This document shows, piece after piece, positions 51,806 to 62,830 of a stretch of DNA of 64,000 nt; the first letter of the stretch is position 1; each line of letters starts with the position of its first letter. Both the position numbers and the translations under genes were made by a program. The stretch lies in the IMG/VR virus record IMGVR_UViG_3300006931_000029, positions 1 to 64,000 of that record, one strand, 5' to 3'. The notes below the pieces were generated by a model. That model was not told the DNA's origin. It ran no database searches and saw nothing but the letters and a program-made list of their open reading frames with translations.

Positions 51806-52462
51806 TCACTTTTTCTTCGGGATCAAGAAGTGTCTCCAAGTCGGGTGCTTAATGTCGCGCATCATTGCGCAGCGCGGCACCTTCTTCGGAGCGATCGGTG
51901 TCCTGATAAGCTTTAGACCAACCTCGTGCGGTAGCTTGTTGCTCTTTTCGCTGTTGATCTTCGGCTTGCACCAGACAAGATTCTCGAACGTGTCTTTGCC
52001 ACCCTTGTCGCGTGGAACAACGTGGTCGAGATTTCCAGCAGAACCGATGTATTCACCGGAGTACTGGCAAACGCCGCCGTCACGCTCGCGAATGCTCTTC
52101 GAGTTTGGCCTCGGAGTGTAATCCGGCATGCCAGCGTAGTTGCACGCAACTACGATCGTTGGAACGCGAATGCGTCCACCGTTTGGAGCACCGTCTCGGA
52201 GACTCGTCTGGATGAACAAGTCCCACGGACGAATCGGCAAAGCGATCCAGTCCTCCCACGCAGTCGGGTGGGCTTTGGTCAGCTTGTCCGTCGGCTCACC
52301 GTTCTCGTCGAGAACAAAGTCAAGATCGAGCGCGTAAACCGGCGGCTCGCCGTTCAAACCAGACGTGAGCGACGTGATTGCCTTCTTAACCGTGTAGTGG
52401 TTAATCGGCTGCCAGAGCTTGTTTAGAGCTAGGACGATGGTCTTGTTTAGGACTTCGCTCAT
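51806..52462 (-). CDS. HNH endonuclease
   Basis: VLALN..WQP, RD...CQYSG, NLDHVVP...GG....ENLV, N..K.N. Confidence 0.88.
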   Translation of the reverse strand: MSEVLNKTIVLALNKLWQPINHYTVKKAITSLTSGLNGEPPVYALDLDFVLDENGEPTDKLTKAHPTAWEDWIALPIRPWDLFIQTSLRDGAPNGGRIRVPTIVVACNYAGMPDYTPRPNSKSIRERDGGVCQYSGEYIGSAGNLDHVVPRDKGGKDTFENLVWCKPKINSEKSNKLPHEVGLKLIRTPIAPKKVPRCAMMRDIKHPTWRHFLIPKKK

Positions 52463-52507
52463 GGTGGTATGGGTGAAAGAATATGGTGCGCACCGCCTTT
52501 TGAATAA

Positions 52508-52549
52508 GAATAAAAATAGAAGAGGGCGGTCCGTTTCCAGACCGCCCTC
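52508..52549 (-). terminator. Terminator after the Ro60 gene
   Basis: 10-bp GAGGGCGGTC/GACCGCCCTC stem followed by a T-rich tract on the minus strand. Confidence 0.7.
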
Positions 52550-52565
52550 GAAGTGAACTAGGGCT

Positions 52566-54199: not shown

Positions 54200-54275
54200 T
54201 GGAGCCCGCTGCCGGAATTGCACCGGCCATCTCTGGAGTACAAAGCCAGGGTCTCGCTCACTAAACGTAACGGGC
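54200..54275 (-). tRNA. tRNA-Thr(UGU)
   Basis: Hand-folded cloverleaf, encoded CCA, UGC T-loop. Confidence 0.85.
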
Positions 54276-54364
54276 AAATGACATCGCACGCGCATGTTGT
54301 TACAGCAAGCGTACCCACTGCGAAACGGTTTAGCGCTTCGATCTGCATTTCGTGCGAAGATGAT

Positions 54365-54441
54365 TGGTGGACCCAGTGGGATTTGCACCCACGATCAAAG
54401 AATTATGAGTTCTCTGCTTTGGACTGCTAAGCTACAGGTCC
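54365..54441 (-). tRNA. tRNA(CAU), probably Ile2
   Basis: GGACCUG acceptor, CU-CAU-AA loop; Ile2 versus Met inferred from body sequence. Confidence 0.8.
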
Positions 54442-54447
54442 AACAAG

Positions 54448-54804
54448 ATGATTTCTAGCCAAAGAAAAATTGTCAAAGAAAAGTTGATATTTCATCGCGG
54501 TCATAGATGCGAAGGTTGCCAGGGCACTCAATGGCGAGGAAAACCAATCCCTTTGGAACTTCATCATGAGACTGACAGTGACGAAGAAAAGGACCTTCAG
54601 CTTCTGTGTCCTAACTGTCACGCTCAAACCCCGAACTATCGAGGGCGAAACAAGAAAGCTGGAAAGATTTGGAGCAATCTCTGCTCGTGCGGTAATCGAA
54701 AACACGTGTGTTCCCCGAGTTGCAGAAGTTGTGGCGCGAAAAGAAGATGGAATGGTGCCCTTGGAGGGAGTTGCACCCTCACGACATGCGTCACTAAGGT
54801 TTAA
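54448..54804 (+). CDS. HNH (homing-type) endonuclease, antisense within the tRNA array
   Basis: CEGC, LELHH, LLCPNCHAQT. Confidence 0.75.
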   Translation: MISSQRKIVKEKLIFHRGHRCEGCQGTQWRGKPIPLELHHETDSDEEKDLQLLCPNCHAQTPNYRGRNKKAGKIWSNLCSCGNRKHVCSPSCRSCGAKRRWNGALGGSCTLTTCVTKV

Positions 54805-54836
54805 GCAAAGCGCGTCTCCTTTTCCGCCACAAGGGC
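54753..54836 (-). tRNA. tRNA-Leu(UAA)
   Basis: Long variable arm, CCA. Confidence 0.85.
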
Positions 54837-54840
54837 AAGT

Positions 54841-54926
54841 TGGTGCCGGCGACAGGAATCGCACCTGCATGGCCCGAAGACCGCTGGATTTTGAGTTCAG
54901 TGTGTATCCTATTCCACCACGCCGGC
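54841..54926 (-). tRNA. tRNA-Leu(CAA)
   Basis: Long variable arm, CCA. Confidence 0.9.
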
Positions 54927-54931
54927 AAAAT

Positions 54932-55008
54932 TGGTGCCCTCGGCGGGACTCGAACCCGCAACCTCGAGGTTAGAAAGCTCTTGCTCTAGTCCATTGAGCT
55001 ACGAGGAC
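54932..55008 (-). tRNA. tRNA-Arg(UCU)
   Basis: Canonical GG D-loop and UUC T-loop. Confidence 0.9.
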
Positions 55009-55013
55009 AAAAT

Positions 55014-55090
55014 TGGCGCCTCAGACAGGACTCGCACCTGCAACCTGCAGTTTAGGAAACCGCCGCTCTATCTAGTTGAGCTACTGAGAC
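55014..55090 (-). tRNA. tRNA-Arg(CCU)
   Basis: Cloverleaf, CCA. Confidence 0.9.
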
Positions 55091-55094
55091 AAAT

Positions 55095-55180
55095 TGGTGC
55101 CCGCGACAGGAATCGCACCTGCATGGTTTTTCAACCACTAATTTCTAAGACTAGCGTGTCTACTGTTCCACCACGCGGGC
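55095..55180 (-). tRNA. tRNA-Leu(UAG)
   Basis: Long variable arm, CCA. Confidence 0.9.
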
Positions 55181-55185
55181 AAAGA

Positions 55186-55248
55186 TGGAGGGAGCGTCCG
55201 TGCTCGGCACCCTGAGCGCTCAGCCACAACCTCAAGCTGTGGACTCCC
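55186..55248 (-). ncRNA. 63-nt CCA-ended mini-cloverleaf
   Basis: GGGAG.../...CUCCC-U-CCA closing three hairpins; no D/T consensus. Confidence 0.5.
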
Positions 55249-55259
55249 ATTTTCAAAAT

Positions 55260-55333
55260 TGGCTCCCGACCAAGGATTCGCACCTTGGCAAAACGAGTCA
55301 GAGTCGTTTGTGCTACTGTTACACCAGTCGGGA
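55260..55333 (-). tRNA. tRNA-Gln(CUG)
   Basis: U1-A72, G73, CCA. Confidence 0.9.
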
Positions 55334-55334
55334 A

Positions 55335-55429
55335 TGGCGGAGGTGAGCAGGTTCGCACTGCGCCGAGCTTTACCCCGGGCCATGTTTAGCAAACATGTGG
55401 GACTCCTAGTTGTCCACCTTTCTACCTCC
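55335..55429 (-). tRNA. tRNA-Ser(GCU), atypical 8/4 fold
   Basis: 8-bp acceptor with bulged A, 4-bp T stem, long variable arm, G73. Confidence 0.8.
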
Positions 55430-55433
55430 AAAA

Positions 55434-55508
55434 TGGTGCCCGCACCGGGAATCGCACCCGGCTCTCCGCCTTGAGAGGGCGGCGAACTAACTGATATTCG
55501 ATGCGGGC
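55434..55508 (-). tRNA. tRNA-Glu(CUC)
   Basis: Cloverleaf, CCA. Confidence 0.88.
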
Positions 55509-55513
55509 AAAAA

Positions 55514-55598
55514 TGGTCGGCATGACAGGAATCGCACCTGCACGGATTTTATCCAACGCCTTCTGAGGACGCCGTGTCTACTGTTCCACCACATGCCG
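55514..55598 (-). tRNA. tRNA-Leu(CAG)
   Basis: Long variable arm, CCA. Confidence 0.9.
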
Positions 55599-55603
55599 AA
55601 AAA

Positions 55604-55679
55604 TGGTCCTCGCTGTAGGATTCGCACCCACAACTTCCTCCGTGTGAAAGAGGCACTCTAACTGTTGAGTTAAGCGAGG
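55604..55679 (-). tRNA. tRNA-Val(CAC)
   Basis: Cloverleaf, CCA. Confidence 0.9.
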
Positions 55680-55683
55680 AAAA

Positions 55684-55878
55684 TTATTCGACGGCTTCGC
55701 AGATGTCGCGAATGAGGGCAAAGTATGCGATGCATTCACCACCTAGTTTCGTCCCTGGAAGAGCATACTGTCCTGAGCATTGGCGCTCGAGGATAGTCCC
55801 CTTTGGGTAAGCAATGCCGACCTTCAAGTCTAGGTAGTCTTCAGTCAGTTGGACCGTTGCTGGTTTTTGAGTCATCAC
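55684..55878 (-). CDS. Small hypothetical protein inside the tRNA array
   Basis: Fills the gap between RNA genes, same strand. Confidence 0.5.
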   Translation of the reverse strand: MMTQKPATVQLTEDYLDLKVGIAYPKGTILERQCSGQYALPGTKLGGECIAYFALIRDICEAVE

Positions 55879-55892
55879 TTTTAGAATAAATC

Positions 55893-55974
55893 GTGCAGAA
55901 AGCGAAGGGCTGTTCGTTGGTTAGTCGCCGTTGAACAGGTAGCATCGTTGGACCCGGACTAACGGGTTCTGCAC
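55893..55974 (-). ncRNA. Three-way-junction RNA with potential kissing loops
   Basis: 8-bp terminal stem; loops carry GUUAGUC and GACUAAC. Confidence 0.55.
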
Positions 55975-55978
55975 AAAG

Positions 55979-56071
55979 TGGCGGAGAGGTGCAGGTTCGC
56001 ACTGCGCACGATTAAACGTGTCCGAGTTTTCGAGGCTCGTGGGACTCCTGATTGTCCTCCTTACTCTCTCC
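55979..56071 (-). tRNA. tRNA-Ser(CGA), atypical 8/4 fold
   Basis: Same architecture as Ser(GCU). Confidence 0.8.
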
Positions 56072-56072
56072 G

Positions 56073-56162
56073 TGGCGGAAGGTAAAGGAGTTGCACCCTA
56101 GCCGGTTTCCCGACTGATCCGCTTTCCAAGCGGTCCCCACTCTACAGCAGGTCCTACCTTCC
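56073..56162 (-). tRNA. tRNA-Ser(GGA)
   Basis: Long variable arm, G73, irregular D arm. Confidence 0.78.
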
Positions 56163-56166
56163 AAAG

Positions 56167-56244
56167 TGGTGCACGCGGAGGGATTTGAACCCCCAACCCT
56201 TCGTTCCGAAGACGAATGCTCTGGTCCAATTGAGCTACGCGTGC
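56167..56244 (-). tRNA. tRNA-Arg(UCG)
   Basis: Canonical elbow, CCA. Confidence 0.9.
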
Positions 56245-56245
56245 A

Positions 56246-56333
56246 TGGCGGAAGGTGTAGGATTCAAACCCACGGCCGGTTTCCCGACTCCGAGGTTCAA
56301 GCTCGGTGCAATAATTCGCTCTGCCAACCTTCC
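56246..56333 (-). tRNA. tRNA-Ser(UGA)
   Basis: Long variable arm; UUUGAAU T-loop with GA in the D-loop. Confidence 0.88.
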
Positions 56334-56340
56334 AAGTTTT

Positions 56341-56546
56341 CGAACCAGTGTAGCCTGGATTCTGTTTTATCCGCACATTTCTCTAAGCCGCTACCACGAC
56401 GTTTGAACGGGAAGCACTACCCTGACGTCTTAATTTGCGTTGCACCTACCGAGGTCCGCGAGCGTTAACTCTCCCTCGTGCTGCTTTGGTGTCCTAGCTT
56501 CCTCAGGCCGATACACTTTCTCGACCCGCGTGCAGTCCTGTATTCG
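56341..56546 (-). ncRNA. rnpB: Minimal RNase P RNA-like gene
   Basis: Ordered motifs GAGGAAGCUAGGAC, GCAACGCAAAU, UAGAGAAAUG, AAACAGAAUCCAGGCUA; the ends pair as P1. Confidence 0.72.
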
Positions 56547-56961
56547 AAGATGGTTCTTGCGCCAATTTGATGCTAAAAACATCAAAAATGCTGCCGATTG
56601 ATTCAGGCGAAAAGTCTGACGGTTTTCGAATCATGACGGCAAAATCGATCTTGCGCACGGCATCTATCAATTTTTCGTCAATATATCCGGACACAATGCT
56701 GACCGGAGTCATTATTTTGTTGGCTCTCATTTCCCGAAAAACGTCTAAGCCGCTACCATCTGGTAGCTTCATGTCCAACAGCACCACGTGAAACTCTCGC
56801 TGCGCCAGTTGATTGATCGCTTCCTGGCACGTCTTAGCCCAGAACACGTGGCATCTGTAACTCTTTGAGGCGTTAATCAACAACTCCGCCAGTAGCTCAT
56901 CGTCCTCAACGAGAAGCACGTCTTTTATGAGATTCTTAGCGTATTCCGCAAGAGTTTTCAT
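56503..56961 (-). CDS. Single-domain response regulator (REC/CheY-like)
   Basis: VLLVEDD, LLDMKLPDGSG, VSG, KP. Confidence 0.88.
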   Translation of the reverse strand: MKTLAEYAKNLIKDVLLVEDDELLAELLINASKSYRCHVFWAKTCQEAINQLAQREFHVVLLDMKLPDGSGLDVFREMRANKIMTPVSIVSGYIDEKLIDAVRKIDFAVMIRKPSDFSPESIGSIFDVFSIKLAQEPSSNTGLHAGRESVSA

Positions 56962-57006
56962 TAAAACAAATATAGACCATGGAACGACGAACCGTTCCCT
57001 GAGAAG

Positions 57007-57080
57007 TGGCACCCGCGCAAGGATTCGCACCTTGGCAAAGTGAGTCAAAGTCACTTGTGCTACTGTTACACCACACGGGT
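57007..57080 (-). tRNA. tRNA-Gln(UUG)
   Basis: Cloverleaf, CCA. Confidence 0.9.
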
Positions 57081-57275
57081 AAAAACCCCGTCGACGGTCC
57101 GCGATCCATCTGGCAGGCAGGCGCATTACGACTCAGCGACGATCAATCGCCTACCGTGACTCGGTCGACTACGAATCTGCGTCCCCTGAACGGAGACAAA
57201 AGCTTTGCCGGCGGCGATCGCATCCGCAGCTTGGGTTCCTCGAGCTCGCCCAAGACTTGCTACTCATCGGCAAAA

Positions 57276-57351
57276 TGGTCCTCGCGGCAGGATTCGCACC
57301 TGCGACCTCTTCCATGTCAAGGAAGCGCGCTAACTGCTGTGCTACGCGAGG
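57276..57351 (-). tRNA. tRNA-Val(GAC)
   Basis: Cloverleaf, CCA. Confidence 0.9.
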
Positions 57352-57352
57352 A

Positions 57353-57429
57353 TGGCTCCGGCAGAAGGGTTCGCACCTTCATCTTCTCGGTTAACAGCCG
57401 AGCGCTCTACTAAGTTGAGCTACACCGAA
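57353..57429 (-). tRNA. tRNA-Asn(GUU), copy with A18/G55 elbow
   Basis: Cloverleaf, G73, CCA. Confidence 0.88.
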
Positions 57430-57435
57430 ACAAAA

Positions 57436-57512
57436 TGGTCCTCTCAGCCGGAGTCGCACCGACAACCTCGTCCTTCGCAGAGACGCGCTCTATCTAGTTG
57501 AGCTATGAGAGG
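57436..57512 (-). tRNA. tRNA-Arg(GCG)
   Basis: Loop CU-GCG-AA. Confidence 0.88.
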
Positions 57513-57516
57513 AAAT

Positions 57517-57593
57517 TGGGGCGGCTAACGGGATTCGCACCCGCGGTCCTCTGATTCACAATCAGATGCTTTTACTGCTAAGCTATAGCCGCC
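57517..57593 (-). tRNA. tRNA-His(GUG)
   Basis: Encoded G-1 and C73. Confidence 0.9.
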
Positions 57594-57599
57594 ATAAAT

Positions 57600-57684
57600 T
57601 GGTGCGGATAGGGAGAATCGCACTCCCATGGCTGTCAACCGTTACGTTCTCAACGTAGTGTGTCTACTGTTCCACCATATCCGC
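57600..57684 (-). tRNA. tRNA-Leu(GAG)
   Basis: Long variable arm, CCA. Confidence 0.9.
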
Positions 57685-57854
57685 AAGAGCTGGGATTTGC
57701 ACCCTTTACCGCCTCGCTCAGGCGTCTTGTCCGACGATGACTTTTGCTACTCGCAACCATCGTCATTATTTTAGGTTGCTTTGGCGCACCACCGACTGAT
57801 CCTTCGAGAGCTGACGACAGCATTAAGGACCCTCTATGAACAAAATGAACAAAA

Positions 57855-57930
57855 TGGAGCCTAAGAAGGGATTTGCACCCATGACCCACGCTTTACGAAA
57901 GCGTTGCTCTACTAACTGAGCTACTTAGGC
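57855..57930 (-). tRNA. tRNA-Thr(CGU)
   Basis: Cloverleaf, CCA. Confidence 0.9.
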
Positions 57931-57934
57931 AAAG

Positions 57935-58159
57935 TTAAGCTTCACCGCCTCGAGGCGGTGCGGGACGCTTGATCCCAAAGGTTAGGTTCTCGAATGCCCT
58001 ACAGTCGTTCGAGTCAATGGACTTGAACCTGCCGTCATCTAGCTGAACCAAGAAAATTGGATTGTGGTCGATGCCGTAATCGATCATCAGGATTGCGCGT
58101 CCAGGACCGAGAGGTGTCTGCACCCATATCGGCGCTGAGAACTCGTGGGTAATGGTCAT
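57935..58159 (-). CDS. Small conserved phage protein inside the tRNA array
   Basis: 74 aa, TPLG.G.A...IDYG..HN. Confidence 0.6.
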   Translation of the reverse strand: MTITHEFSAPIWVQTPLGPGRAILMIDYGIDHNPIFLVQLDDGRFKSIDSNDCRAFENLTFGIKRPAPPRGGEA

Positions 58160-58179
58160 TCCACTACCAGAACGCAAAA

Positions 58180-58255
58180 TGGAGCTGAACATGGGACTTG
58201 CACCCATCATCACCTGCTTACCAAGCAGGGTCCGCGCTATCTCGGAGTGATCAGC
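58180..58255 (-). tRNA. tRNA-Thr(GGU)
   Basis: Cloverleaf, CCA, atypical D arm. Confidence 0.85.
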
Positions 58256-58257
58256 AA

Positions 58258-58344
58258 TGGTCCGCCTGGAAGGACTTGCACCTACGTAGACCCGAAGGTC
58301 AATGCGTTTACAGCGCATCGCAATTGCTACTCTGCCACAGGCGG
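58258..58344 (-). tRNA. tRNA-Tyr(GUA) with C1-G72
   Basis: Long variable arm, A73. Confidence 0.9.
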
Positions 58345-58349
58345 ATAAA

Positions 58350-58425
58350 TGGAAGCACCGACGGGATTTGCACCCGTGACCTTGGGCTTATGAGTCCCGC
58401 GCTCTACTAACTGAGCTACAGTGCC
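58350..58425 (-). tRNA. tRNA-Met(CAU), elongator-like
   Basis: GGC acceptor start, CU-CAU-AA. Confidence 0.82.
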
Positions 58426-58433
58426 ACTGAGAA

Positions 58434-58523
58434 TGGTGGAACGGGAGGGACTTGCACCCCCGACGGTGGGTTCACCACATGGGCTTAAAAGGCCCGACCA
58501 ATCGCTGCTATGGGGACCGTTCC
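58434..58523 (-). tRNA. tRNA with Lys anticodon (UUU) and a long variable arm
   Basis: CU-UUU-AA loop; GUGG/CCAC variable stem. Confidence 0.8.
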
Positions 58524-58529
58524 AAAAGT

Positions 58530-58604
58530 TGGCTGGGAAGGTTGGGATCGAACCAACGACCATCGAGTTAACAGCTCGCCGCTCTGCCACTGAGCTACAT
58601 CCCA
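58530..58604 (-). tRNA. tRNA-Asn(GUU), canonical-elbow copy
   Basis: GG D-loop, UUC T-loop. Confidence 0.9.
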
Positions 58605-58612
58605 ATGAAAAA

Positions 58613-58798
58613 TTTGCCTTGGCGTGGACCTTCAGCAGTGACCGCAGTCCAACCTCGCTTTTCCCGCTGAGCTTTCTGTTTCGACCGAAGTCTTCCGCCG
58701 CGATGTCTCGAACGACCAGGCCGGTATTAGCGACCCGAAGCGGTATGAACAACCTAGCGCGCCACACTTGAGTCTCCCTCGTAGAGCTCCAAGGCAAA
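58613..58798 (-). ncRNA. ~186-nt structured RNA of unknown family
   Basis: 10-bp terminal pairing UUUGCCUUGG/CCAAGGCAAA, UUCG-capped hairpins, fills the tRNA gap. Confidence 0.55.
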
Positions 58799-58799
58799 A

Positions 58800-58875
58800 T
58801 GGCGGGAATGAAGGGATTCGCACCCTCGGTCTCTTGCGTGACAGGCAAGCGCTTTAACTGCTAAGCTACACCCCC
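58800..58875 (-). tRNA. tRNA-Asp(GUC)
   Basis: G73, CCA. Confidence 0.9.
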
Positions 58876-58882
58876 GTGAAAA

Positions 58883-58990
58883 TGGTTGAGGCCCAGCTTG
58901 TCGTCTGCGCTATGCCCAGCTGGAATCGAACCGAGTCTAGTTAGGGACTTGCACCCCGCTTCGCGACAAGATCGCACCGCACGATCCTCA
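58883..58990 (-). ncRNA. CCA-ended RNA with two T-loop hairpins
   Basis: UGAGG/CCUCA-ACCA, CUUGUCG/CGACAAG, GGG-UGCAAGU-CCC and GG-UUCGAUU-CC. Confidence 0.6.
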
Positions 58991-58994
58991 AAAA

Positions 58995-59071
58995 TGGTCC
59001 GGACGACAGGATTCGCACCTGCGGCCTCTTGATCCCAAATCAAGCGTTCTACTAGGCTGAACTACATCCGG
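58995..59071 (-). tRNA. tRNA-Pro(UGG)
   Basis: C1-G72, A73. Confidence 0.9.
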
Positions 59072-59077
59072 ATAAAT

Positions 59078-59187
59078 TGTGCCGAAGACGTTTCTGCATT
59101 TGTAAGCCACTTGGTTCCCTGCGGGAATTGCTGGTAACAGGGAGACGGTTTCGAACCCGTGTCTTCATGACCCCCATCGCTGACACA
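59078..59187 (-). ncRNA. Circularly permuted tRNA-like RNA on a terminal stem
   Basis: UGUGUC/GGCACA ends, GAAGAC/GUCUUC, T arm first, then UCCCUG..ACCA..CAGGGA. Confidence 0.5.
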
Positions 59188-59191
59188 AAAG

Positions 59192-59270
59192 TGGGAGCAG
59201 GAGTTGGATTTGAACCAACGATTTCGACCTTATGAGGATCGCGAGGACGGCCATGCTCCTCTACCCTGCC
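59192..59270 (-). tRNA. tRNA(CAU), initiator-like body
   Basis: A11-U24 D stem, UUCAAAU; lacks the three G-C anticodon-stem pairs. Confidence 0.75.
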
Positions 59271-59421
59271 ACAAAAAGATTATTGACACGACTCGCACGG
59301 ACCATCGTCTAAGTTGCAAGTTTTTGGCTTCTCGCCTTCAGGCGCAGGAGCATCTTGCACGAACTCGCCGATGTCGTCATCGGGAGACAGAGTCGACGGT
59401 TTTGGATCAGTCATGCGCTAT

Positions 59422-59598
59422 CTACAAGTTCAATCCGTGCAGAACTCCGATTTTGTCCAGCGCATAAACCACGAAGATCAGAGCCAAGATAGCACCGATG
59501 ATTTTCAACGGCGTACCTTGAGCGAACTGACCAGCTACCCAGAAGATCAGGTAGAGCACGAGACCGACTATGAGGATGACGATTAGTGATTCGATCAT
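59422..59598 (-). CDS. 58-aa two-helix membrane protein
   Basis: Two hydrophobic segments; GAGGAGG upstream. Confidence 0.7.
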   Translation of the reverse strand: MIESLIVILIVGLVLYLIFWVAGQFAQGTPLKIIGAILALIFVVYALDKIGVLHGLNL

Positions 59599-59634
59599 GG
59601 TAAACAGACATAGTCTGCCCCTCCTCGTTCCAAA

Positions 59635-59710
59635 TGGTGGGAACAGCTGGAGTTGCACCAGCGACACGCAGATTTTCAGTCTGCTGCTCTACTGACTGAG
59701 CTATGTCCCC
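59635..59710 (-). tRNA. tRNA-Phe(GAA)
   Basis: Cloverleaf, CCA. Confidence 0.92.
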
Positions 59711-59714
59711 AAAG

Positions 59715-59847
59715 TGGTGGGAAGTGCAGGATTCGAACCTACTTGCTTGGCTTTTCAGGGCTTTGCTTTTCCGAAGTAACCCAGTCGGTCACTGCGATCT
59801 TGCGACCGAGAATTAGGTGACTAGGTGTTGTCTTGTTAAGACTTCCC
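59715..59847 (-). ncRNA. tRNA body with Y-like module replacing the anticodon arm (chimera 1)
   Basis: GGGAAGU/ACUUCCC-ACCA, T arm, internal ..UUCUC-GGUC-GCAA-GAUC-GCAGUGA-N9-UUACUUC. Confidence 0.72.
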
Positions 59848-59851
59848 AAAG

Positions 59852-59927
59852 TGGCACGGACGGCAGGAATTGCACCTGCGACCTGGAGATTTGGAGTTTC
59901 CCGCTCTACTAATTGAGCTACGTCCGT
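59852..59927 (-). tRNA. tRNA-Trp(CCA)
   Basis: A1-U72, G73. Confidence 0.9.
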
Positions 59928-59928
59928 A

Positions 59929-60004
59929 TGGAGAGGGATGTCGGAATTGCACCGACGCATGACGCTTTTGCAGAACGTTGCCTTTCTGACTTGGCTAATC
60001 CCTC
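59929..60004 (-). tRNA. tRNA-Cys(GCA)
   Basis: U73, CCA. Confidence 0.88.
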
Positions 60005-60008
60005 AAAG

Positions 60009-60083
60009 TGGTGGAAGCAGTGGGACTTGCACCCACAACCCTTCGCTTAAGAGGCGAGAGCTCTACTATTGAGCTATACTTCC
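60009..60083 (-). tRNA. tRNA-Lys(CUU)
   Basis: Cloverleaf, CCA. Confidence 0.9.
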
Positions 60084-60088
60084 AAAAA

Positions 60089-60218
60089 TGGTGCGCGCGC
60101 CTGGATTCGAACCAAGTCTAATCTTTTCGTAGAAGAAGTAACCCAATCGGTCACTGCGTCTTGCGACGAGAATAAGGTGACTGAGATATTTGTTGTGCTA
60201 CCATTACACTACACGCGC
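60089..60218 (-). ncRNA. tRNA body with Y-like module in the anticodon arm (chimera 2)
   Basis: Intact acceptor, D and T arms plus CCA; permuted module closed by a GCAA loop. Confidence 0.75.
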
Positions 60219-60225
60219 AAAAGCT

Positions 60226-60360
60226 TTCCGAGAGAAAAACGAGGACGGTAGAAGACGCGGTGTTAAGTCGCGTTGCCCAACCATTAGGCGTATTCTCCAG
60301 TTTTGGCGGAGGATATTGGATTTGAACCAATGAAGTAACCGTTTCTCTCACTACTCGGAA
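60226..60360 (-). ncRNA. YrlA-like RNA with a permuted tRNA domain
   Basis: UUCCGAG/CUCGGAA ends, UAGUGA..UUACUUC, then T arm, acceptor 3' strand + GCCA, spacer, acceptor 5' strand, D arm. Confidence 0.72.
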
Positions 60361-60362
60361 AA

Positions 60363-60490
60363 TGGTGGACTGCACGAGATTCGAACTCGGACGCTCGCCC
60401 CCGTAGGGCCGCGAGCGGTTCTACCTGCCGTGGCGGACGGATTGATTACCGTCGGACTTGATTCGTCGTTACGCGTTGGCGATACAGCCC
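60363..60490 (-). ncRNA. 128-nt tRNA-like RNA with Ala identity and no anticodon arm
   Basis: GGGCUGU/GCAGUCC-ACCA (G3-U70, A73), UUCGAAU T arm. Confidence 0.65.
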
Positions 60491-60494
60491 GAAA

Positions 60495-60572
60495 TGGTCG
60501 GTCTGGCCGGATTCGCACCGGCGATCTTTCCGCCCCGAACGGAACGCGATAACTAGGCTACGCTACAGACCG
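60495..60572 (-). tRNA. tRNA-Pro(CGG)
   Basis: C1-G72, A73. Confidence 0.9.
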
Positions 60573-60576
60573 AAAA

Positions 60577-60652
60577 TGGTCCTCCCGATAGGATTCGCAC
60601 CTACGACCCCACGCTTATCAAGCGCGTGCTCTAACTGCTGAGCTACGAGAGG
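60577..60652 (-). tRNA. tRNA-Ile(GAU)
   Basis: Cloverleaf, CCA. Confidence 0.9.
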
Positions 60653-60656
60653 AAAA

Positions 60657-60792
60657 TGGTGCAGCGTGTAGGATTCGAACCCACGTAAGCGGTTTGGATT
60701 TGAAGTAACTCAATCTTCACTGCGTCTTGCGACGAGAAAAGTCAGACTGAGACTTGTTAGGACCGCTGTCCTGGCCACTAGACGAACGCTGC
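60657..60792 (-). ncRNA. Complete tRNA body with Y-like module inserted in the anticodon loop (chimera 3)
   Basis: Anticodon stem GCGGU/ACCGC intact around the module. Confidence 0.78.
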
Positions 60793-60800
60793 AAATTTTT

Positions 60801-60929
60801 CCGTGAGAACAATGGACTGGGAGGTGAAGACCTTTCGGCCCTCGGGTGGAATTGAACCACCATTGATTCCTTAATAGGGAATTGCTTTACCATTAAGCAA
60901 CGAAGTATCCCATATTCCTCACTGCACGG
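60801..60929 (-). ncRNA. Y-like RNA enclosing an unpermuted D/anticodon/T cloverleaf
   Basis: CCGUG/CACGG ends, CAGUGA..AUACUUC, then D arm, AUUCC-CUAUUAA-GGAAU and T arm. Confidence 0.7.
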
Positions 60930-60939
60930 AAATTGTAAT

Positions 60940-61001
60940 CGGGAGAAAAGAATGTCGACGGGTGTATTTCCCCAAGAAGTATCCGTAGACGTCACTACCC
61001 G
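60940..61001 (-). ncRNA. Minimal Y-like module
   Basis: CGGG-UAGUGA..AUACUUC..UUUUCU-CCCG. Confidence 0.7.
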
Positions 61002-61010
61002 AAAAAGCTC

Positions 61011-61082
61011 TCTGCGAGAATAAAGTGGACTCGGTGTTTTTCGATGTTGATGTTGAAGTAACCGAACCCGTCACTGCGCAGA
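61011..61082 (-). ncRNA. Minimal Y-like module
   Basis: UCUGCG-CAGUGA..UUACUUC..UAUUCU-CGCAGA. Confidence 0.7.
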
Positions 61083-61085
61083 AAT

Positions 61086-61162
61086 TGGTGGACCGGATGG
61101 GAGTTGCACCCACCACACGGTGCTTGCAAAGCACTGTCGCCGCTAACGGTACATGCCGGCCC
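61086..61162 (-). tRNA. tRNA-Ala(UGC)
   Basis: G3-U70, irregular D arm. Confidence 0.85.
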
Positions 61163-61169
61163 AATAAAG

Positions 61170-61247
61170 TGGTGCGTCAAGAGGGAATTGCACCCACGAC
61201 ATCCTCTTTGGAAGAGAGGTGCTCTAAACTAACTGAGCTATTGACGC
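61170..61247 (-). tRNA. tRNA-Gly(UCC), A73
   Basis: GCG acceptor start, CU-UCC-AA. Confidence 0.9.
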
Positions 61248-61251
61248 GAAA

Positions 61252-61311
61252 CGGGAGAAAAGTCGACAAGGTGTTTTTCATACAAAGAAGTAACCCTGTC
61301 ATCACTGCCCG
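61252..61311 (-). ncRNA. Minimal Y-like module
   Basis: CGGG-CAGUGA-UGACAGGG-UUACUUC..ACCUUGUCG-ACUUUUCU-CCCG. Confidence 0.7.
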
Positions 61312-61315
61312 AAGA

Positions 61316-61394
61316 TGGTGCGTGTGGCGGGATTCGCACCCACGAAATCCTCGTTGGCAACGAGGCGCTGTAGACTAGGCTGAGCCACACACGC
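61316..61394 (-). tRNA. tRNA-Gly(GCC), A73
   Basis: Cloverleaf, CCA. Confidence 0.9.
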
Positions 61395-61398
61395 AAAT

Positions 61399-61474
61399 TG
61401 GTGCCCGCGACGAGATTCGCACTCGTGTTCTCGCCTTGAAAGGGCGGCGTCCTGGTCTCCTAGACGACGCGGGC
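61399..61474 (-). tRNA. tRNA-Glu(UUC)
   Basis: Cloverleaf, CCA. Confidence 0.9.
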
Positions 61475-61475
61475 A

Positions 61476-61549
61476 TGGCGCACGAGGATGGAATTGAACC
61501 ACCGACCAACCAGTGGAAACCGGCTGCTCTTTCTCTGAGCTACTCGTGC
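61476..61549 (-). tRNA. tRNA-like gene with 6-nt anticodon loop (undetermined)
   Basis: GCCGG-UUUCCA-CUGGU; other arms intact. Confidence 0.65.
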
Positions 61550-61785
61550 AAAATTGTTCGGGCAGAGGCTGTCAAAGCATTTAACGCATCGCGCACCTCT
61601 GCCCTAGTTTTCTATATTCAAAAGAACGATACACACCTTCGACAACTCTTAGTTGAGTCTATTGGTGACCGTGTTGGCCCCGATAGCTATTCCCATCGTT
61701 TGTCTGGCCTAGATGGGTTGCCAGGAGGGATTTTACCCTCAGAGTTGACCGGCTTGCGCCGGAAAGTTGTTTGAATTCAGATACG

Positions 61786-61817
61786 AAAAAACCCGACCTC
61801 TTGCGAGAGTCGGGCTC
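61786..61817 (-). terminator. Intrinsic terminator (attenuator) upstream of the tRNA array
   Basis: GAGCCCGACUCUC-GCAA-GAGGUCGGG-UUUUUU. Confidence 0.85.
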
Positions 61818-61847
61818 AACTAAACCTAAGGTTCCTTTTCTGGCTAC

Positions 61848-61994
61848 CTAGGCGGTTGAACCCTCCTCGATGGGCAAATTATGCCCTTGGGTCGTCTTCG
61901 CGCTACGGCTTTCATATCCGGCCGACAGCACGACGCCGCAATCCTGGTTAAACCAGGTTTTTGGCTGTATCGATACTGTTGATCTTAAGGACAT
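61848..61994 (-). CDS. 48-aa leader peptide (pan-codon attenuator uORF)
   Basis: MSLRSTVSIQPKTWFNQDCGVVLSAGYESRSAKTTQGHNLPIEEGSTA*; its last codons are complementary to the terminator 5' arm. Confidence 0.7.
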   Translation of the reverse strand: MSLRSTVSIQPKTWFNQDCGVVLSAGYESRSAKTTQGHNLPIEEGSTA

Positions 61995-62123
61995 GGAAAG
62001 TGAAGATTGGTTGGTTGAAAATTTGGTGCGAGCTGATTTATCTACTCGCGTCGTGTGAAACTGGAAGAACTTAGACTCTTAGGACCAAGATTTGGTCCAG
62101 GCTGACAAGGTTAATTTGGAAAT

Positions 62124-62209
62124 TGGTGGCGAAAGAAGGGATCGAACCTCCGACCTGGTCGTCCATTTTTAAGGTGGCCGTCCATGCTCTACCGCTAAGC
62201 TATTTCGCC
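62124..62209 (-). ncRNA. tRNA-like RNA with extended anticodon arm
   Basis: Perfect acceptor, D and T arms plus CCA; ~29-nt anticodon arm. Confidence 0.65.
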
Positions 62210-62212
62210 GAC

Positions 62213-62282
62213 TTTCAAGAGAACACCGAGGAAACAGGAACAATCCAGATTACTACGGCCAAAACCTGGCGTTCTCTTGAAA
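62213..62282 (-). ncRNA. Long-stem RNA (15-bp terminal helix)
   Basis: UUUCAAGAGAACGCC/GGUGUUCUCUUGAAA. Confidence 0.45.
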
Positions 62283-62283
62283 T

Positions 62284-62357
62284 TGGAGCCGACCGGGGAT
62301 TAAGAAACACCCCTCTTCCGTCCCATGGGACGGCGTGCGCGGTTACACTATGACGGC
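62284..62357 (-). ncRNA. Degenerate tRNA-like RNA with collapsed anticodon loop
   Basis: CCGUCCC-AU-GGGACGG, 11-nt T-loop, CCA. Confidence 0.55.
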
Positions 62358-62363
62358 ATAAAG

Positions 62364-62469
62364 TGGTGCCAAGGCCGACATCGCTGCCGGCGGCGAAACC
62401 CTGCCCGCTGCATTAGTCGCGTCCGAAGACACGTCGAGAGCAGTGGCGTTTGATTCCACGGGGCTTGGC
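62364..62469 (-). ncRNA. 106-nt CCA-ended tRNA-like RNA with a long central arm
   Basis: GCCAAG/CUUGGC-ACCA; central helix capped by CUUCGG. Confidence 0.55.
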
Positions 62470-62475
62470 ATAAAT

Positions 62476-62830
62476 TGGTGGAGATGGCGGGAGTTGAACC
62501 CGCGTGCTAAAAGAGAACCGAATCTGAGTCTACGCGCGTGTCCTATTTTAATGTCCAGGCGGACCTATCTTTGGCTGAGTTTTTGAGTTCCGCCTCAGCC
62601 GGCAGCGAAATCAGTAGCGTAGTTTTTACGCAGCACGATCTACCCCGCTCATCTTAATCGTGCCACGCGCAGCCTAATTAGGCCGCGAGACGGAGCTCGT
62701 TGGAACGAGCGAACGCCTTGACAATGGTGTTGCCATTTGTGGTTTGCCAAGTCTTGTTATGGAGGTCGACCTAGCAGTCTCCAGCGCGCATCAGGTATCT
62801 GTCTCCTAAAGTAGAATCCAGAACATCCCC
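62476..62830 (-). ncRNA. ssrA: tmRNA, tag (A)GNTIVKAFARSNELRLAA
   Basis: GGGGAUG/CAUCUCC-ACCA with G3-U70, GGAUUC 5' motif, T arm, tag ORF 62678..62734 ending LAA-TAA. Confidence 0.93.

What the first reader, a model, noticed from the sequence alone, without database searches (positions are those of the whole stretch)
59715..61311. Eight Y-RNA-like modules in four architectures, three grafted into the anticodon arm of CCA-ended tRNA bodies
Seen: the minus-strand motif stem-(C/U)AGUGA-N8-10-(U/A)UACUUC...stem-UUnUUCU-stem occurs eight times, with differing but compensating stems. (a) Minimal hairpins: 60940-61001, 61011-61082, 61252-61311. (b) Carrying a permuted tRNA domain: 60226-60360. (c) Enclosing an unpermuted cloverleaf: 60801-60929. 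(d) Itself circularly permuted, closed by a GCAA tetraloop and placed in the anticodon arm of normal tRNA bodies ending in ACCA: 59715-59847, 60089-60218, 60657-60792. Established: bacterial YrlA RNAs lie next to Ro60 genes and consist of a Ro-binding stem carrying a permuted tRNA-like domain with a closed acceptor, i.e. form (b). Inference: the module is the binding site for the Ro60 encoded at 52566..54047. Form (d) would be an inside-out Y RNA with a free, potentially chargeable CCA end that could tether Ro60 to RNase P, synthetases or EF-Tu, or decoy tRNases. The classical GNCGA Ro motif is not present verbatim.
Basis: partly seen in the sequence, partly recalled or inferred. Interest (0 to 1): 0.9.

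Follow-up and report, generated by a model that had tools for sequence, protein, structure and literature searches.

The report
Phage Y RNAs, three tRNA-shaped
Eight small RNA genes inside a giant phage's tRNA cluster carry what looks like the docking site for the phage's own Ro60 protein, and three of them are built like tRNAs with that site where the anticodon should be, a wiring I did not find described in the papers I could search.

Summary
The motif AGUGA-N7-11-UACUUC occurs eight times, all on the minus strand at 59.7-61.3 kb, against 0.13 expected by chance. Each copy has two covarying helices around conserved loops.

The module has the same layout as the Ro60-binding stem of bacterial YrlA Y RNAs, with AGUGA where YrlA has GNCGAA. 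Rfam's YrlA model does not reach its threshold on any copy here or on the relatives tested.

Searching public data by RNA pattern alone returned Ro60 (TROVE) genes next to module arrays in 19 viral and 25 of 33 "bacterial" loci. So these are Y RNAs of a large unmodelled class, and Ro60 binding is strongly inferred, not shown.

- **Forms a, b and c** (hairpin, permuted tRNA domain, enclosed cloverleaf) recur in phages and in bacterial-genome contigs.
- **Form d** has a 7-bp acceptor stem, an NCCA end and a T arm, and the module is circularly permuted and closed by a GNRA loop in the anticodon position. I found it only in phages: this jumbo-phage lineage and crAss001-like gut phages. Compensatory changes support its acceptor stems.
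- One of the three form-d copies lacks a D arm.

Verdict: a new variant of a known kind. Chargeability and any decoy role remain untested.

The parts
61252..61311 (-). Form a1: minimal hairpin Y RNA. Stem 1 61308-61311 with 61252-61255. 5' loop CAGUGA 61302-61307. Stem 2 61293-61301 with 61264-61272. UACUUC 61287-61292. 3' loop ACUUUUCU.
   Evidence: Model R1, 69 bits, E 2e-16. Motif match. Helix coordinates.
61011..61082 (-). Form a2: minimal hairpin Y RNA. Stem 2 61061-61069 with 61027-61035. 3' loop ends UUUAUUCU.
   Evidence: R1, 53.5 bits, E 4e-12..
60940..61001 (-). Form a3: minimal hairpin Y RNA. 5' loop UAGUGA, then AUACUUC. Stem 2 is 8 bp with one mismatch.
   Evidence: R1, 36.2 bits, E 2e-7. 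Sequence read.
60801..60929 (-). Form c: module whose apical domain is an unpermuted tRNA-like cloverleaf at 60837-60907. It has D, anticodon (AUU) and T arms, a 5-bp acceptor-like helix that uses the CUUC of UACUUC, and no CCA. A GAAA-capped hairpin follows.
   Evidence: R1, 26.1 bits, E 1e-4, not in the seed. ARAGORN calls tRNA-Asn(att). Rfam tRNA, 49.9 bits, model positions 3-68.
60657..60792 (-). Form d3: tRNA body with a 7-bp acceptor, a tRNA-Glu-like D arm, a 5-bp anticodon stem, a T arm with UUCGAAU, and discriminator A plus CCA. The permuted module is at 60699-60754 and stem 1 is closed by GCAA.
   Evidence: R2, 66 bits. Sequence. D arm like the window's tRNA-Glu(UUC). The L170 relative keeps stem 1 through a U-A to C-G change with a GAAA loop.
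60226..60360 (-). Form b: YrlA-type. The module carries a permuted tRNA domain (T arm, closed acceptor, D arm) plus an extra anticodon-arm-like hairpin.
   Evidence: R1, 31.5 bits, E 3e-6, not in the seed. Sequence. An orthologous element is in L041.
60089..60218 (-). Form d2: tRNA body (7-bp acceptor, D arm, T arm, A plus CCA) with the permuted module at 60132-60188.
   Evidence: R2, 66.3 bits. Rfam tRNA, 37.1 bits, above the gathering score of 29. Acceptor pairs 3 and 4 change on both sides across three lineages.
59715..59847 (-). Form d1: 7-bp acceptor, T arm and A plus CCA, no D arm. The permuted module is at 59770-59828.
   Evidence: R2, 65.7 bits. Four compensatory acceptor pairs and one T-stem pair against the L041 orthologue.
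52566..54047 (-). Ro60 (TROVE plus vWA) gene, the presumed protein partner.
   Evidence: Pfam TROVE, 3.7e-16, plus a VWA domain. Full-length match to Thermus phage phiLo Ro60 (9KOP/9L5Y, E 7e-22) and to D. radiodurans Rsr (2NVO). Start codon.
51806..52606 (-). HNH_4 nuclease ORF directly after Ro60. The homology begins at residue 43, so the real start is probably near 52459. It is a possible effector of the cassette.
   Evidence: Pfam HNH_4. 50% identity over the whole length to the ORF that follows Ro60 in Opitutaceae loci.
54203..62830 (-). Context: a dense minus-strand array of about 40 tRNA genes plus a tmRNA, in which the eight elements are embedded. There is no terminator-like site on this strand between 62140 and 54000.

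Best explanation
**What they are.** The eight elements are Y RNAs, the non-coding partners of the phage's Ro60 protein. They belong to a large sequence class of the YrlA/YrlB superfamily that current models do not cover.

**The shared module.** Each copy has these parts in order:
- stem 1
- an asymmetric internal loop, with 5' strand (C/U)AGUGA and 3' strand ending UUUUCU
- stem 2 of 8-10 bp
- a junction formed by UACUUC and ACAC

Ro60 is inferred to dock on this module, mainly on the 5' strand of the loop, as in known Y RNAs.

**Making the RNAs (inferred).** The RNAs are transcribed with the tRNA array and cut out by the tRNA-processing enzymes.

**The other end is a variable effector domain.**
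- nothing (form a, YrlB-like)
- a permuted tRNA domain (form b, YrlA-like)
- an enclosed cloverleaf (form c)
- a tRNA body whose ends are at the acceptor stem (form d)

**Form d.** It is the circular permutation of YrlA, with the same L-shape and the Ro60 site at the anticodon end. The Ro stem is closed by a GNRA loop and the acceptor stem is open with an encoded NCCA. It would therefore mature and be stabilised exactly like a tRNA, through RNase P at the 5' end and a CCA 3' end. It cannot decode.

**Likely role (inferred).** The RNAs would tether or gate Ro60, and perhaps the co-conserved HNH nuclease, on tRNA-handling or structured-RNA targets early in infection.

**Shown versus inferred.** Shown are the anatomy, the covariation, the coupling to TROVE genes and the conservation of form d. 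Inferred are Ro60 binding, processing and function.
For: **Real and non-random.**
- 8 matches against 0.13 expected.
- Linear forms: 88% of cells paired and 16 of 17 pairs changed on both sides. Slid controls give 44-55%.
- Permuted forms: 91% paired and 8 of 12 pairs changed on both sides. Slid controls give 29-45%.

**Same layout as the YrlA terminal stem.** See the Rfam YrlA alignment on L010, 52.7 bits, E 3e-11. AGUGA falls where the GNCGAA-containing loop lies, and UUAC falls where the conserved CUAC (YUAY) lies (Chen 2014, PMC4201824).

**Coupling to Ro60 in viral contigs.**
- Loci were fetched by a 15-base RNA pattern only.
- 18 of 26 model-positive loci carry a TROVE ORF in the DNA held. 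Among model-negative loci it is 1 of 91. Fisher p = 4e-14.
- Those Ro60 proteins are only 28-63% identical to the window's.

**Coupling to Ro60 in genome contigs.**
- 25 of 33 loci have TROVE immediately downstream on the same strand.
- The arrays hold up to 8 modules, and R1 gives 82 hits.

**Variant classes next to Ro60 in GenBank phages.** They keep (U/A)UACUUC but have other 5' loops. Examples are phage G, Atuin, RHph_Y65, csAssE-Sib and crAss001.

**Form d is under selection.**
- Compensatory acceptor and T-stem changes occur between the window, L170 and L041 lineages.
- Stem 1 changes U-A to C-G and keeps a GNRA loop.
- Independent occurrence in crAss001, cr106_1 and cr112_1. RNAalifold recovers acceptor, D, T, stem 2 and stem 1 there.

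**The protein is a real Ro60**.

**Literature context.**
- M. smegmatis YrlA is cut by RNase P and gains CCA (PMC4201824).
- Phage phiLo Ro60 binds phage-encoded Y-like RNAs (PMC12135203).
- The crAss001 TROVE gene is an early gene (PMC8375218).
Against: - No binding, expression or end-mapping data exist for any member of this class.
- The Ro60-contact motif of characterised Y RNAs (GNCGAA, GGUCCGA) is not present.
- Rfam YrlA gives no hit on any of the eight copies, even at E <= 10.
- In the window the modules lie 5.6-7.2 kb from the Ro60 gene.
- The invariance of AGUGA and UACUUC in my alignments is partly ascertainment, because loci were fetched with those letters.
- The Ro60 tree does not show clean co-evolution of protein clade and loop class. 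It needs 7 changes of the AGUGA label.
- AGUGA and UUACU are complementary, so an alternative local hairpin exists. RNAalifold prefers it for d2.
- Stem 2 of b and c is imperfect.
Confidence: 0.8

Rival explanations
1. The module is the binding site of a different protein, for example the HNH_4 nuclease that follows Ro60. Ro60 would be only a frequent neighbour.
For: - The HNH ORF after Ro60 is conserved at 36-67% identity over its whole length between this phage, L002 and seven Verrucomicrobiota loci.
- No binding data discriminate between the two proteins.
Against: - TROVE is found next to the module in 44 loci. The HNH homologue is found in only about 10 of them, and it is absent from the L041 and crAss001 loci that have form d.
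- The module layout matches the Ro60-binding stem of YrlA.
Confidence: 0.07
2. Forms c and d are precursors of real decoding tRNAs. In form d the module would be an intron-like insert. In form c the module would be a leader-trailer helix. Either would be removed during maturation.
For: - The c cloverleaf is called a tRNA by ARAGORN and Rfam.
- GenBank annotates two form-c elements of csAssE-Sib as tRNA-Tyr and tRNA-Lys.
- d2 passes the Rfam tRNA gathering score.
Against: - Removing the module from d1-d3 leaves no 7-nt anticodon loop.
- The insert is the complete conserved Y module in permuted order and is capped by a GNRA loop.
- It has no group I intron features, and no Rfam intron hit covers it.
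- d1 has no D arm.
- The c cloverleaf has a 5-bp acceptor, an A34 anticodon and no CCA, while every neighbouring tRNA gene encodes CCA.
- One csAssE-Sib element has G33 in its anticodon loop.
Confidence: 0.05
3. The modules are cis-acting processing or punctuation signals of long tRNA transcripts, such as RNase E or RNase III sites, with no dedicated protein partner.
For: - In the window they sit between tRNA genes with 4-20-nt spacers.
- The array has no internal terminators.
Against: - The same module stands directly upstream of TROVE genes in loci without any tRNA array, for example Lewinella cohaerens L133 and L034/L035.
- About 30 other tRNA junctions in the window lack it.
- Loop letters are conserved across phyla while the stems covary.
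Confidence: 0.05
4. The copies are a selfish or recently duplicated DNA repeat with no RNA function.
For: Eight copies lie within 1.6 kb on one strand.
Against: - Copies share only the loop letters. The helices differ and compensate.
- The family spans Ro60 proteins as low as 28% identical.
Confidence: 0.01

Closest known systems
YrlA (Rfam RF02553; Salmonella, Mycobacterium and 22 phages in Chen et al. 2014, PMC4201824; structure preprint 10.1101/312249)
   Same: - It is encoded on the same strand near Ro60.
- The terminal stem has an asymmetric loop, a second helix of about 7-9 bp, then a YUAY element leading into a tRNA-like domain.
- Form b has the same permuted order: T arm, closed acceptor, D arm.
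   Different: - The loop reads (C/U)AGUGA with UUUUCU instead of GNCGAA-N-G.
- UACUUC is fixed.
- No copy here, or in the relatives tested, reaches the Rfam gathering score. The best is 52.7 bits against 69.
[quoted passage not shown] Forms c and d use other topologies.
[quoted passage not shown]
   Same: It is a Y RNA whose tRNA-like domain has a 7-bp acceptor stem, is a tRNase P substrate and ends in CCA.
   Different: - There the RNA becomes two pieces, because the Ro stem stays open.
- In form d the gene itself is permuted, the Ro stem is closed by a GNRA loop and the CCA is encoded. A single-chain tRNA-shaped RNA results.
YrlB / Yrn2-type hairpin Y RNAs
   Same: Forms a1-a3 are short hairpins. 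They have the Ro module and a small apical loop, and they are encoded in tandem with the tRNA-like Y RNAs.
   Different: They differ in sequence class. Here there are three per genome, and they keep the UACUUC and ACAC junction even without a tRNA domain.
Thermus phage phiLo Yrl1/Yrl2 with phiRo60 (PMC12135203; PDB 9KOP, 9L5Y)
   Same: Phage-encoded Ro60 with phage-encoded Y-like RNAs beside it. The window's Ro60 matches phiRo60 over its full length (E 7e-22).
   Different: The phiLo RNAs were picked by a CGAA motif and have no tRNA bodies. Binding is shown there, not here.
tmRNA and viral tRNA-like structures (TYMV)
   Same: These are tRNA-shaped RNAs with a free CCA end and no decoding anticodon loop. 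Permuted two-piece tmRNAs show that such RNAs tolerate circular permutation.
   Different: They are aminoacylated and act in translation or replication. Nothing here shows charging, and the non-tRNA part is a protein-docking module.
Circularly permuted tRNA genes of red algae and archaea
   Same: The same L-shaped RNA is encoded in alternative circular permutations.
   Different: Those are processed back into normal decoding tRNAs through a circular intermediate. Here both permutations seem to be end products.

Membership tests
Bacterial/phage Y RNA (YrlA/YrlB superfamily) | Encoded close to, and on the same strand as, a Ro60 (TROVE) gene | tested here: met
   - Window: same strand, 5.6-7.2 kb upstream, in one tRNA array.
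- Family: TROVE ORF next to the modules in 19 viral and 25 of 33 genome loci fetched by RNA pattern alone. Fisher p = 4e-14.
Bacterial/phage Y RNA (YrlA/YrlB superfamily) | Terminal stem with an internal loop and a second helix that forms the Ro60-binding module | tested here: met
   Two covarying helices flank conserved loops. The layout is column-for-column equivalent to the Rfam YrlA consensus.
Bacterial/phage Y RNA (YrlA/YrlB superfamily) | GNCGAA-N0-1-G (or GGUCCGA) letters in the 5' strand | tested here: not met
   All eight copies read (C/U)AGUGA. Related classes read GCGGNA, GCGCUGA, GGUGA, AGUGUA and UGCGA.
Bacterial/phage Y RNA (YrlA/YrlB superfamily) | Physical association with Ro60 | not testable with these tools
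   This needs a gel shift or immunoprecipitation.
YrlA (Rfam RF02553) | Score at or above the curated gathering score (69 bits) | tested here: not met
   No hit on any of the eight copies at E <= 10. Relatives with a permuted tRNA domain score 33-53 bits.
YrlA (Rfam RF02553) | Permuted tRNA-like domain: T arm, closed acceptor stem-loop, D arm | tested here: met
   Met by form b only (60226-60360). Forms a lack it. Form c has an unpermuted cloverleaf. Form d has an open acceptor.
tRNA (for form d) | 7-bp acceptor stem, discriminator and CCA, and a T arm with a UUCGAAU-type loop | tested here: met
   d1-d3. The acceptor and T stems keep pairing through changes on both sides in orthologues.
tRNA (for form d) | D arm with a GG loop | tested here: inconclusive
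   Present in d2 and d3, absent in d1.
tRNA (for form d) | Anticodon stem closed by a 7-nt loop with an anticodon | tested here: not met
   A 55-65-nt module replaces the loop, and no anticodon can be reconstituted.
tRNA (for form d) | Rfam tRNA gathering score (29 bits) | tested here: inconclusive
   d2 scores 37.1 bits. d1 and d3 are not reported. crAss001 dA scores 46.6 bits.
Self-cleaving ribozymes, tRNA introns and other Rfam families | Match to any curated model over the module | tested here: not met
   No Rfam family other than tRNA touches the eight elements at E <= 10.

The most novel reading that the evidence does not exclude
Form d defines a functional class of its own: tRNA-shaped, CCA-ended Y RNAs. 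They would pass through the whole tRNA pathway (RNase P, CCA enzyme, modification, perhaps a synthetase and EF-Tu). They would thereby bring Ro60, and in some phages an HNH nuclease, to the translation or tRNA-repair machinery. Alternatively they would act as uncleavable tRNA decoys or sensors against host anticodon nucleases. The class would have arisen independently, or been retained, in jumbo phages of Verrucomicrobiota and in crAss-like gut phages.
Probability: 0.15. Interest if true: 0.85.

Novelty: new variant of a known kind. Interest (0 to 1): 0.68.

Why it matters
**1. Annotation.**
- The finding gives a sequence-and-structure definition of a large Y RNA class that Rfam's YrlA model misses. 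The class occurs in jumbo phages, crAss-like phages, prophage-like tRNA islands of Verrucomicrobiota, and Saprospiraceae.
- Ro60 loci can now be annotated properly. Some 'tRNA genes' in phage genomes are Y RNAs, for example two in phage csAssE-Sib.

**2. What selection keeps.**
- This says selection acts on the two modules and their geometry, not on one transcript layout.

**3. An open question becomes testable.**
- What the tRNA-like half of bacterial Y RNAs is for has been open since 2014.
- A version with a free, encoded CCA end makes it testable.
- crAss001 carries two such genes next to its early TROVE gene and grows on a laboratory Bacteroides strain.

**4. Links to phage-host conflict.**
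- The finding ties phage Ro60 to tRNA arrays.
- In one preprint (PMC11482910) a phage Ro60-like protein counters a host defence.

Tried and rejected
- **Rfam on the region.** At E <= 10 there is no YrlA, Y_RNA, ribozyme or intron hit on the modules. The passing likeness of CAGUGA and UUAC to hammerhead, hairpin or box C/D motifs therefore leads nowhere.
- **GenBank phages by DNA.** There is no close relative, only tRNA-level matches.
- **AGUGA pairing with UUACU as a local hairpin.**
  - RNAalifold prefers this fold for d2.
  - I rejected it as the main fold because the enclosed 8-10 nt covary with the distal strand.
  - The base before UACUUC also switches U to A together with its stem-2 partner.
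- **Module as a tRNA intron.** Rejected; see the rival explanations.
- **Co-evolution of Ro60 clade with loop letters.** The tree gives no clean signal. The AGUGA label needs 7 changes, and sampling was biased by the search pattern.
- **Looking for more form-d lineages.**
  - A viral scan and the single metagenome scan with form-d patterns returned only the window lineage and the L041 lineage.
  - Weak R2 hits elsewhere are junctions between tandem linear copies.
Absence of form d from bacteria is therefore not established.
- **Literature access.**
  - The supplements of Chen 2014 and the 2018/2020 Wolin reviews are not held.
  - I therefore cannot exclude that some AGUGA-class loci were in their tables.
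- **tRNA identity of the form-d bodies.** Only the D arm of d3 clearly resembles a window tRNA (Glu-UUC).
Full report
**1. What is in the window**

The window is part of a 225-kb viral contig, IMGVR_UViG_3300006931_000029. It carries a T4-like portal and a gp25 baseplate gene.

Its minus strand between 54.2 and 62.8 kb is a dense array of about 40 tRNA genes plus a tmRNA. No terminator-like site lies on that strand between 62140 and 54000.

Just downstream of the array lies a Ro60 gene:
- It has Pfam TROVE (3.7e-16) plus a vWA domain.
- It matches the solved Ro60 of Thermus phage phiLo over its full length (E 7e-22), and D. radiodurans Rsr.

**2. Check of the observation**

- AGTGA-N7-11-TACTTC matches eight times, all on the minus strand between 59773 and 61306. 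Chance expectation is 0.13.
- TACTTC occurs nowhere else on that strand of the array.
- Reading the copies shows that the 'N8-10' is the 5' strand of a helix.

The common anatomy, in order:
- stem 1
- (C/U)AGUGA
- stem 2
- (U/A)UACUUC
- a variable apical part
- ACAC
- stem 2'
- N-A-UUUUCU
- stem 1'

In the three CCA-ended elements the same pieces appear in circularly permuted order. Stem 1 is capped by GCAA and stem 2 opens towards a tRNA body.

**3. Structure statistics**

*Linear forms.*
- I aligned 18 minimal hairpins, three from the window and 15 from other contigs.
- 88% of cells pair and 16 of 17 pairs show changes on both sides. Partners slid by 1-3 columns give 44-55%.
- A covariance model from this alignment (R1), run over the whole window with filters off, recovers a1, a2 and a3.
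- It also recovers b (E 3e-6) and c (E 1e-4), which were not in the seed, and nothing else.

*Permuted forms.*
- I aligned eight sequences.
- 91% of cells pair and 8 of 12 pairs change on both sides. Slid controls give 29-45%.
- The model R2 finds d1-d3 at about 66 bits; as three of its eight seeds they match it by construction.

**4. What the module is**

Rfam's YrlA model does not touch any of the eight copies, even at E <= 10.

Relatives that carry a permuted tRNA domain score 33-53 bits on YrlA. That is significant but below the gathering score of 69.

The full-length alignment on L010 shows the correspondence:

| Rfam YrlA consensus | Module here |
|---|---|
| stem | stem 1 |
| AUGCu loop | AGUGA loop |
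| 7-bp helix | stem 2 |
| CUAc | UUAC |
| tRNA-like domain | variable apical part |
| return strands | stem 2' and stem 1' |

In YrlA that loop region holds the GNCGAA-N-G motif thought to contact Ro60, and CUAc is the conserved YUAY (PMC4201824). The module is therefore the YrlA Ro-binding stem with different loop letters.

**5. Association with Ro60**

*Viral contigs.*
- A scan of IMG/VR with a 15-base pattern taken from the RNA only returned 118 loci.
- 26 loci have R1 hits with E < 1e-4, typically 2-5 tandem copies.
- 18 of those 26 carry a TROVE ORF in the few kb held. Among the other 91 loci it is 1. Fisher p = 4e-14.
- The Ro60 proteins are only 28-63% identical to the window's.
- Several modules end a few bases before an ORF that starts MAKFN, MSKFN or MARFN.

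*Species genomes.*
- A scan of 185,579 species genomes with the linear pattern returned 33 loci. About 6 would be expected by chance, by my estimate.
- 25 have TROVE directly downstream on the same strand.
- Most of the rest are cut at the relevant end.
- Arrays reach 8 copies, and R1 gives 82 hits.
- The taxa are Verrucomicrobiota (Opitutaceae, Chthoniobacteraceae), Saprospiraceae/Lewinella, Chitinophagales and one Clostridium.
- Several Verrucomicrobiota loci also hold long tRNA arrays, and one holds a GOLLD RNA. They are probably prophages or phage contigs binned with MAGs.
- Lewinella cohaerens looks cellular.

*Host inference.* In a Ro60 tree the window's protein sits inside a well-supported clade with Verrucomicrobiota sequences, next to Opitutaceae. 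This suggests the host.

**6. Other classes beside Ro60**

Of 13 Ro60 neighbourhoods taken from GenBank phages by protein similarity:
- Eight carry stem-loop modules ending in (U/A)UACUUC, with other 5' loops:
  - phage G: GCGGNA
  - Atuin: GCGCUGA or GUGCAG
  - RHph_Y65: GUUGCGA
  - csAssE-Sib: UGGUGA
  - crAss001, cr106_1 and cr112_1: UAGUGUA
  - LR745206: AGUAA
- Three have more canonical YrlA hits: Tenjo, Neville and CcrColossus.
- In two I found nothing.

The window's class is therefore one branch of a broader family in which UACUUC is the most constant element.

**7. The four architectures**

| Form | Apical or body domain | Where else seen |
|---|---|---|
| a | hairpin, YrlB-like | common everywhere |
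| b | permuted tRNA domain, YrlA-like | common everywhere |
| c | enclosed, unpermuted cloverleaf | viral L048; csAssE-Sib, where GenBank calls two of them tRNA-Tyr and tRNA-Lys; a 1.85-Mb bacterial contig, L152 |
| d | tRNA body with open acceptor | only two phage groups |

*Form d, group 1: this jumbo-phage group.*
- It comprises the window, its relative L170, and a second lineage seen in L041, L131, L108/L111 and L167 whose Ro60 is 55% identical.
- Between these lineages, acceptor pairs 3 and 4 of d2 change on both sides.
- Four acceptor pairs and one T-stem pair of d1 change on both sides.
- Stem 1 of d3 changes U-A to C-G, and its loop changes GCAA to GAAA.
- The L041 lineage has a further kind, with a 7-bp acceptor plus UCCA and no T arm.

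*Form d, group 2: crAss-like phages of Asinivirinae.*
- These are crAss001, cr106_1 and cr112_1.
- One or two such genes (two in crAss001 and cr112_1, one found in cr106_1) follow the TROVE gene. They have standard D and T arms, and the module is closed by GUAA, GAAG or similar loops.
- RNAalifold recovers all helices on its own.
- CCA is not encoded there.

*Window details.*
- The neighbouring tRNA genes and the three form-d genes all encode CCA.
- d3's D arm resembles the window's tRNA-Glu(UUC).
- None of d1-d3 has G3:U70 or an anticodon.

**8. Mechanism**

*Shown:* a conserved two-helix module, tightly linked to Ro60 genes across deep divergence, wired to tRNA-like domains in several topologies.

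*Inferred:*
- Ro60 binds the module.
- The RNAs are released from the tRNA transcript by tRNA-processing enzymes.
- Form d matures like a tRNA and carries Ro60 at its anticodon end.

*Precedents:*
- M. smegmatis YrlA is cut by RNase P and receives CCA (PMC4201824).
[quoted passage not shown] It speculates that some YrlAs might be processed to resemble tRNAs more closely (10.1101/312249).
- phiLo Ro60 binds phage Y-like RNAs and host PNPase (PMC12135203).
- A Ro60-like protein of phage Bas63 counters the ppl defence, and the authors guess that neighbouring 'tRNA genes' may be Y RNAs (PMC11482910).
- The crAss001 TROVE gene is an early gene (PMC8375218).

*Possible extra partner:* an HNH_4 nuclease follows Ro60 in the window, in L002 and in seven Verrucomicrobiota loci. 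Identity is 36-67% over the full length. In one of those loci, sigma-70 and RtcB genes follow it.

**9. Novelty**

Already known:
- Y RNAs next to phage Ro60 genes
- tRNA-like Y RNAs
- tandem Y RNA genes

Apparently not described in the literature I could search:
- the AGUGA/UACUUC class as such
- the enclosed-cloverleaf form
- above all, the inside-out, CCA-ended form

**10. Limits**
- There are no expression or binding data.
- The ascertainment pattern inflates the apparent invariance of the loop letters.
- Form d was not searched for in bacterial genomes.

Noticed in passing
window 56340-56547 (-): A roughly 210-nt RNase P RNA-like element sits inside the tRNA array.
- Rfam RNaseP_bact_a gives 46.9 bits (E 3e-12) across the whole model. 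RNaseP_arch gives 24.7 bits.
- The P4 strands GAGGAA and ACAGAA are kept, and the specificity domain seems to be missing.
- A 75%-identical copy exists in the other form-d phage lineage (L041, L108).
- A quick literature search found no report of phage-encoded RNase P RNA.
   Followed up: partly
window 51806-52606 (-); L141 4094-4786; also L002, L134, L139, L140, L144, L151, L152: - An HNH_4 nuclease ORF immediately follows Ro60. It is conserved at 36-67% identity over its whole length between this phage, L002 and seven Verrucomicrobiota loci.
- In L141 the cassette continues with a sigma-70 factor and RtcB.
- This suggests a Y RNA array / Ro60 / HNH unit that moves as one piece.
   Followed up: partly
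L134, L141, L147, L156 (genome contigs, Verrucomicrobiota): The 'bacterial' Ro60 loci of Opitutaceae carry long tRNA arrays next to the Y RNA arrays. L156 has a GOLLD RNA (134 bits, gathering score 150). They look like prophages or phage contigs inside MAGs, related to this phage.
   Followed up: no
window 61089-61165 (-): A tRNA-Ala(UGC)-like gene with G3:U70, a normal T arm and CCA, but an aberrant D arm. Neither ARAGORN nor Rfam calls it.
   Followed up: partly
window 60362-60491 (-): A 130-nt CCA-ended tRNA-like RNA with a 7-bp acceptor stem, a T arm and several extra hairpins. It is not called by any tool and has no Y module. Its identity is unknown.
   Followed up: partly
window 58436-58526 (-): A type-II-like tRNA with a long variable arm. 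It scores 28.7 bits on Rfam tRNA-Sec, below the gathering score. ARAGORN does not call it.
   Followed up: no
L130 (OR575929, phage csAssE-Sib) 3675-3800 and 3818-3950: Two genes annotated in GenBank as tRNA-Tyr and tRNA-Lys are enclosed by a complete Y-type module (UGGUGA ... UUACUUC ... return strands), just upstream of the phage's Ro60 gene. They are probably form-c Y RNAs, not decoding tRNAs.
   Followed up: partly
L128 (Bacillus phage G) 3480-3960: Four tandem hairpin modules with a GCGG(N)A loop and UUACUUC lie upstream of the TROVE gene gp540. They are unannotated in the record. The only Rfam YrlA hit in that locus lies 2 kb further upstream.
   Followed up: no
window 56503-57126 (-) and 62928-63563 (-): A response-regulator receiver-domain ORF sits inside the tRNA array, and a Cpn10 (GroES)-like ORF sits upstream of the tmRNA.
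   Followed up: no
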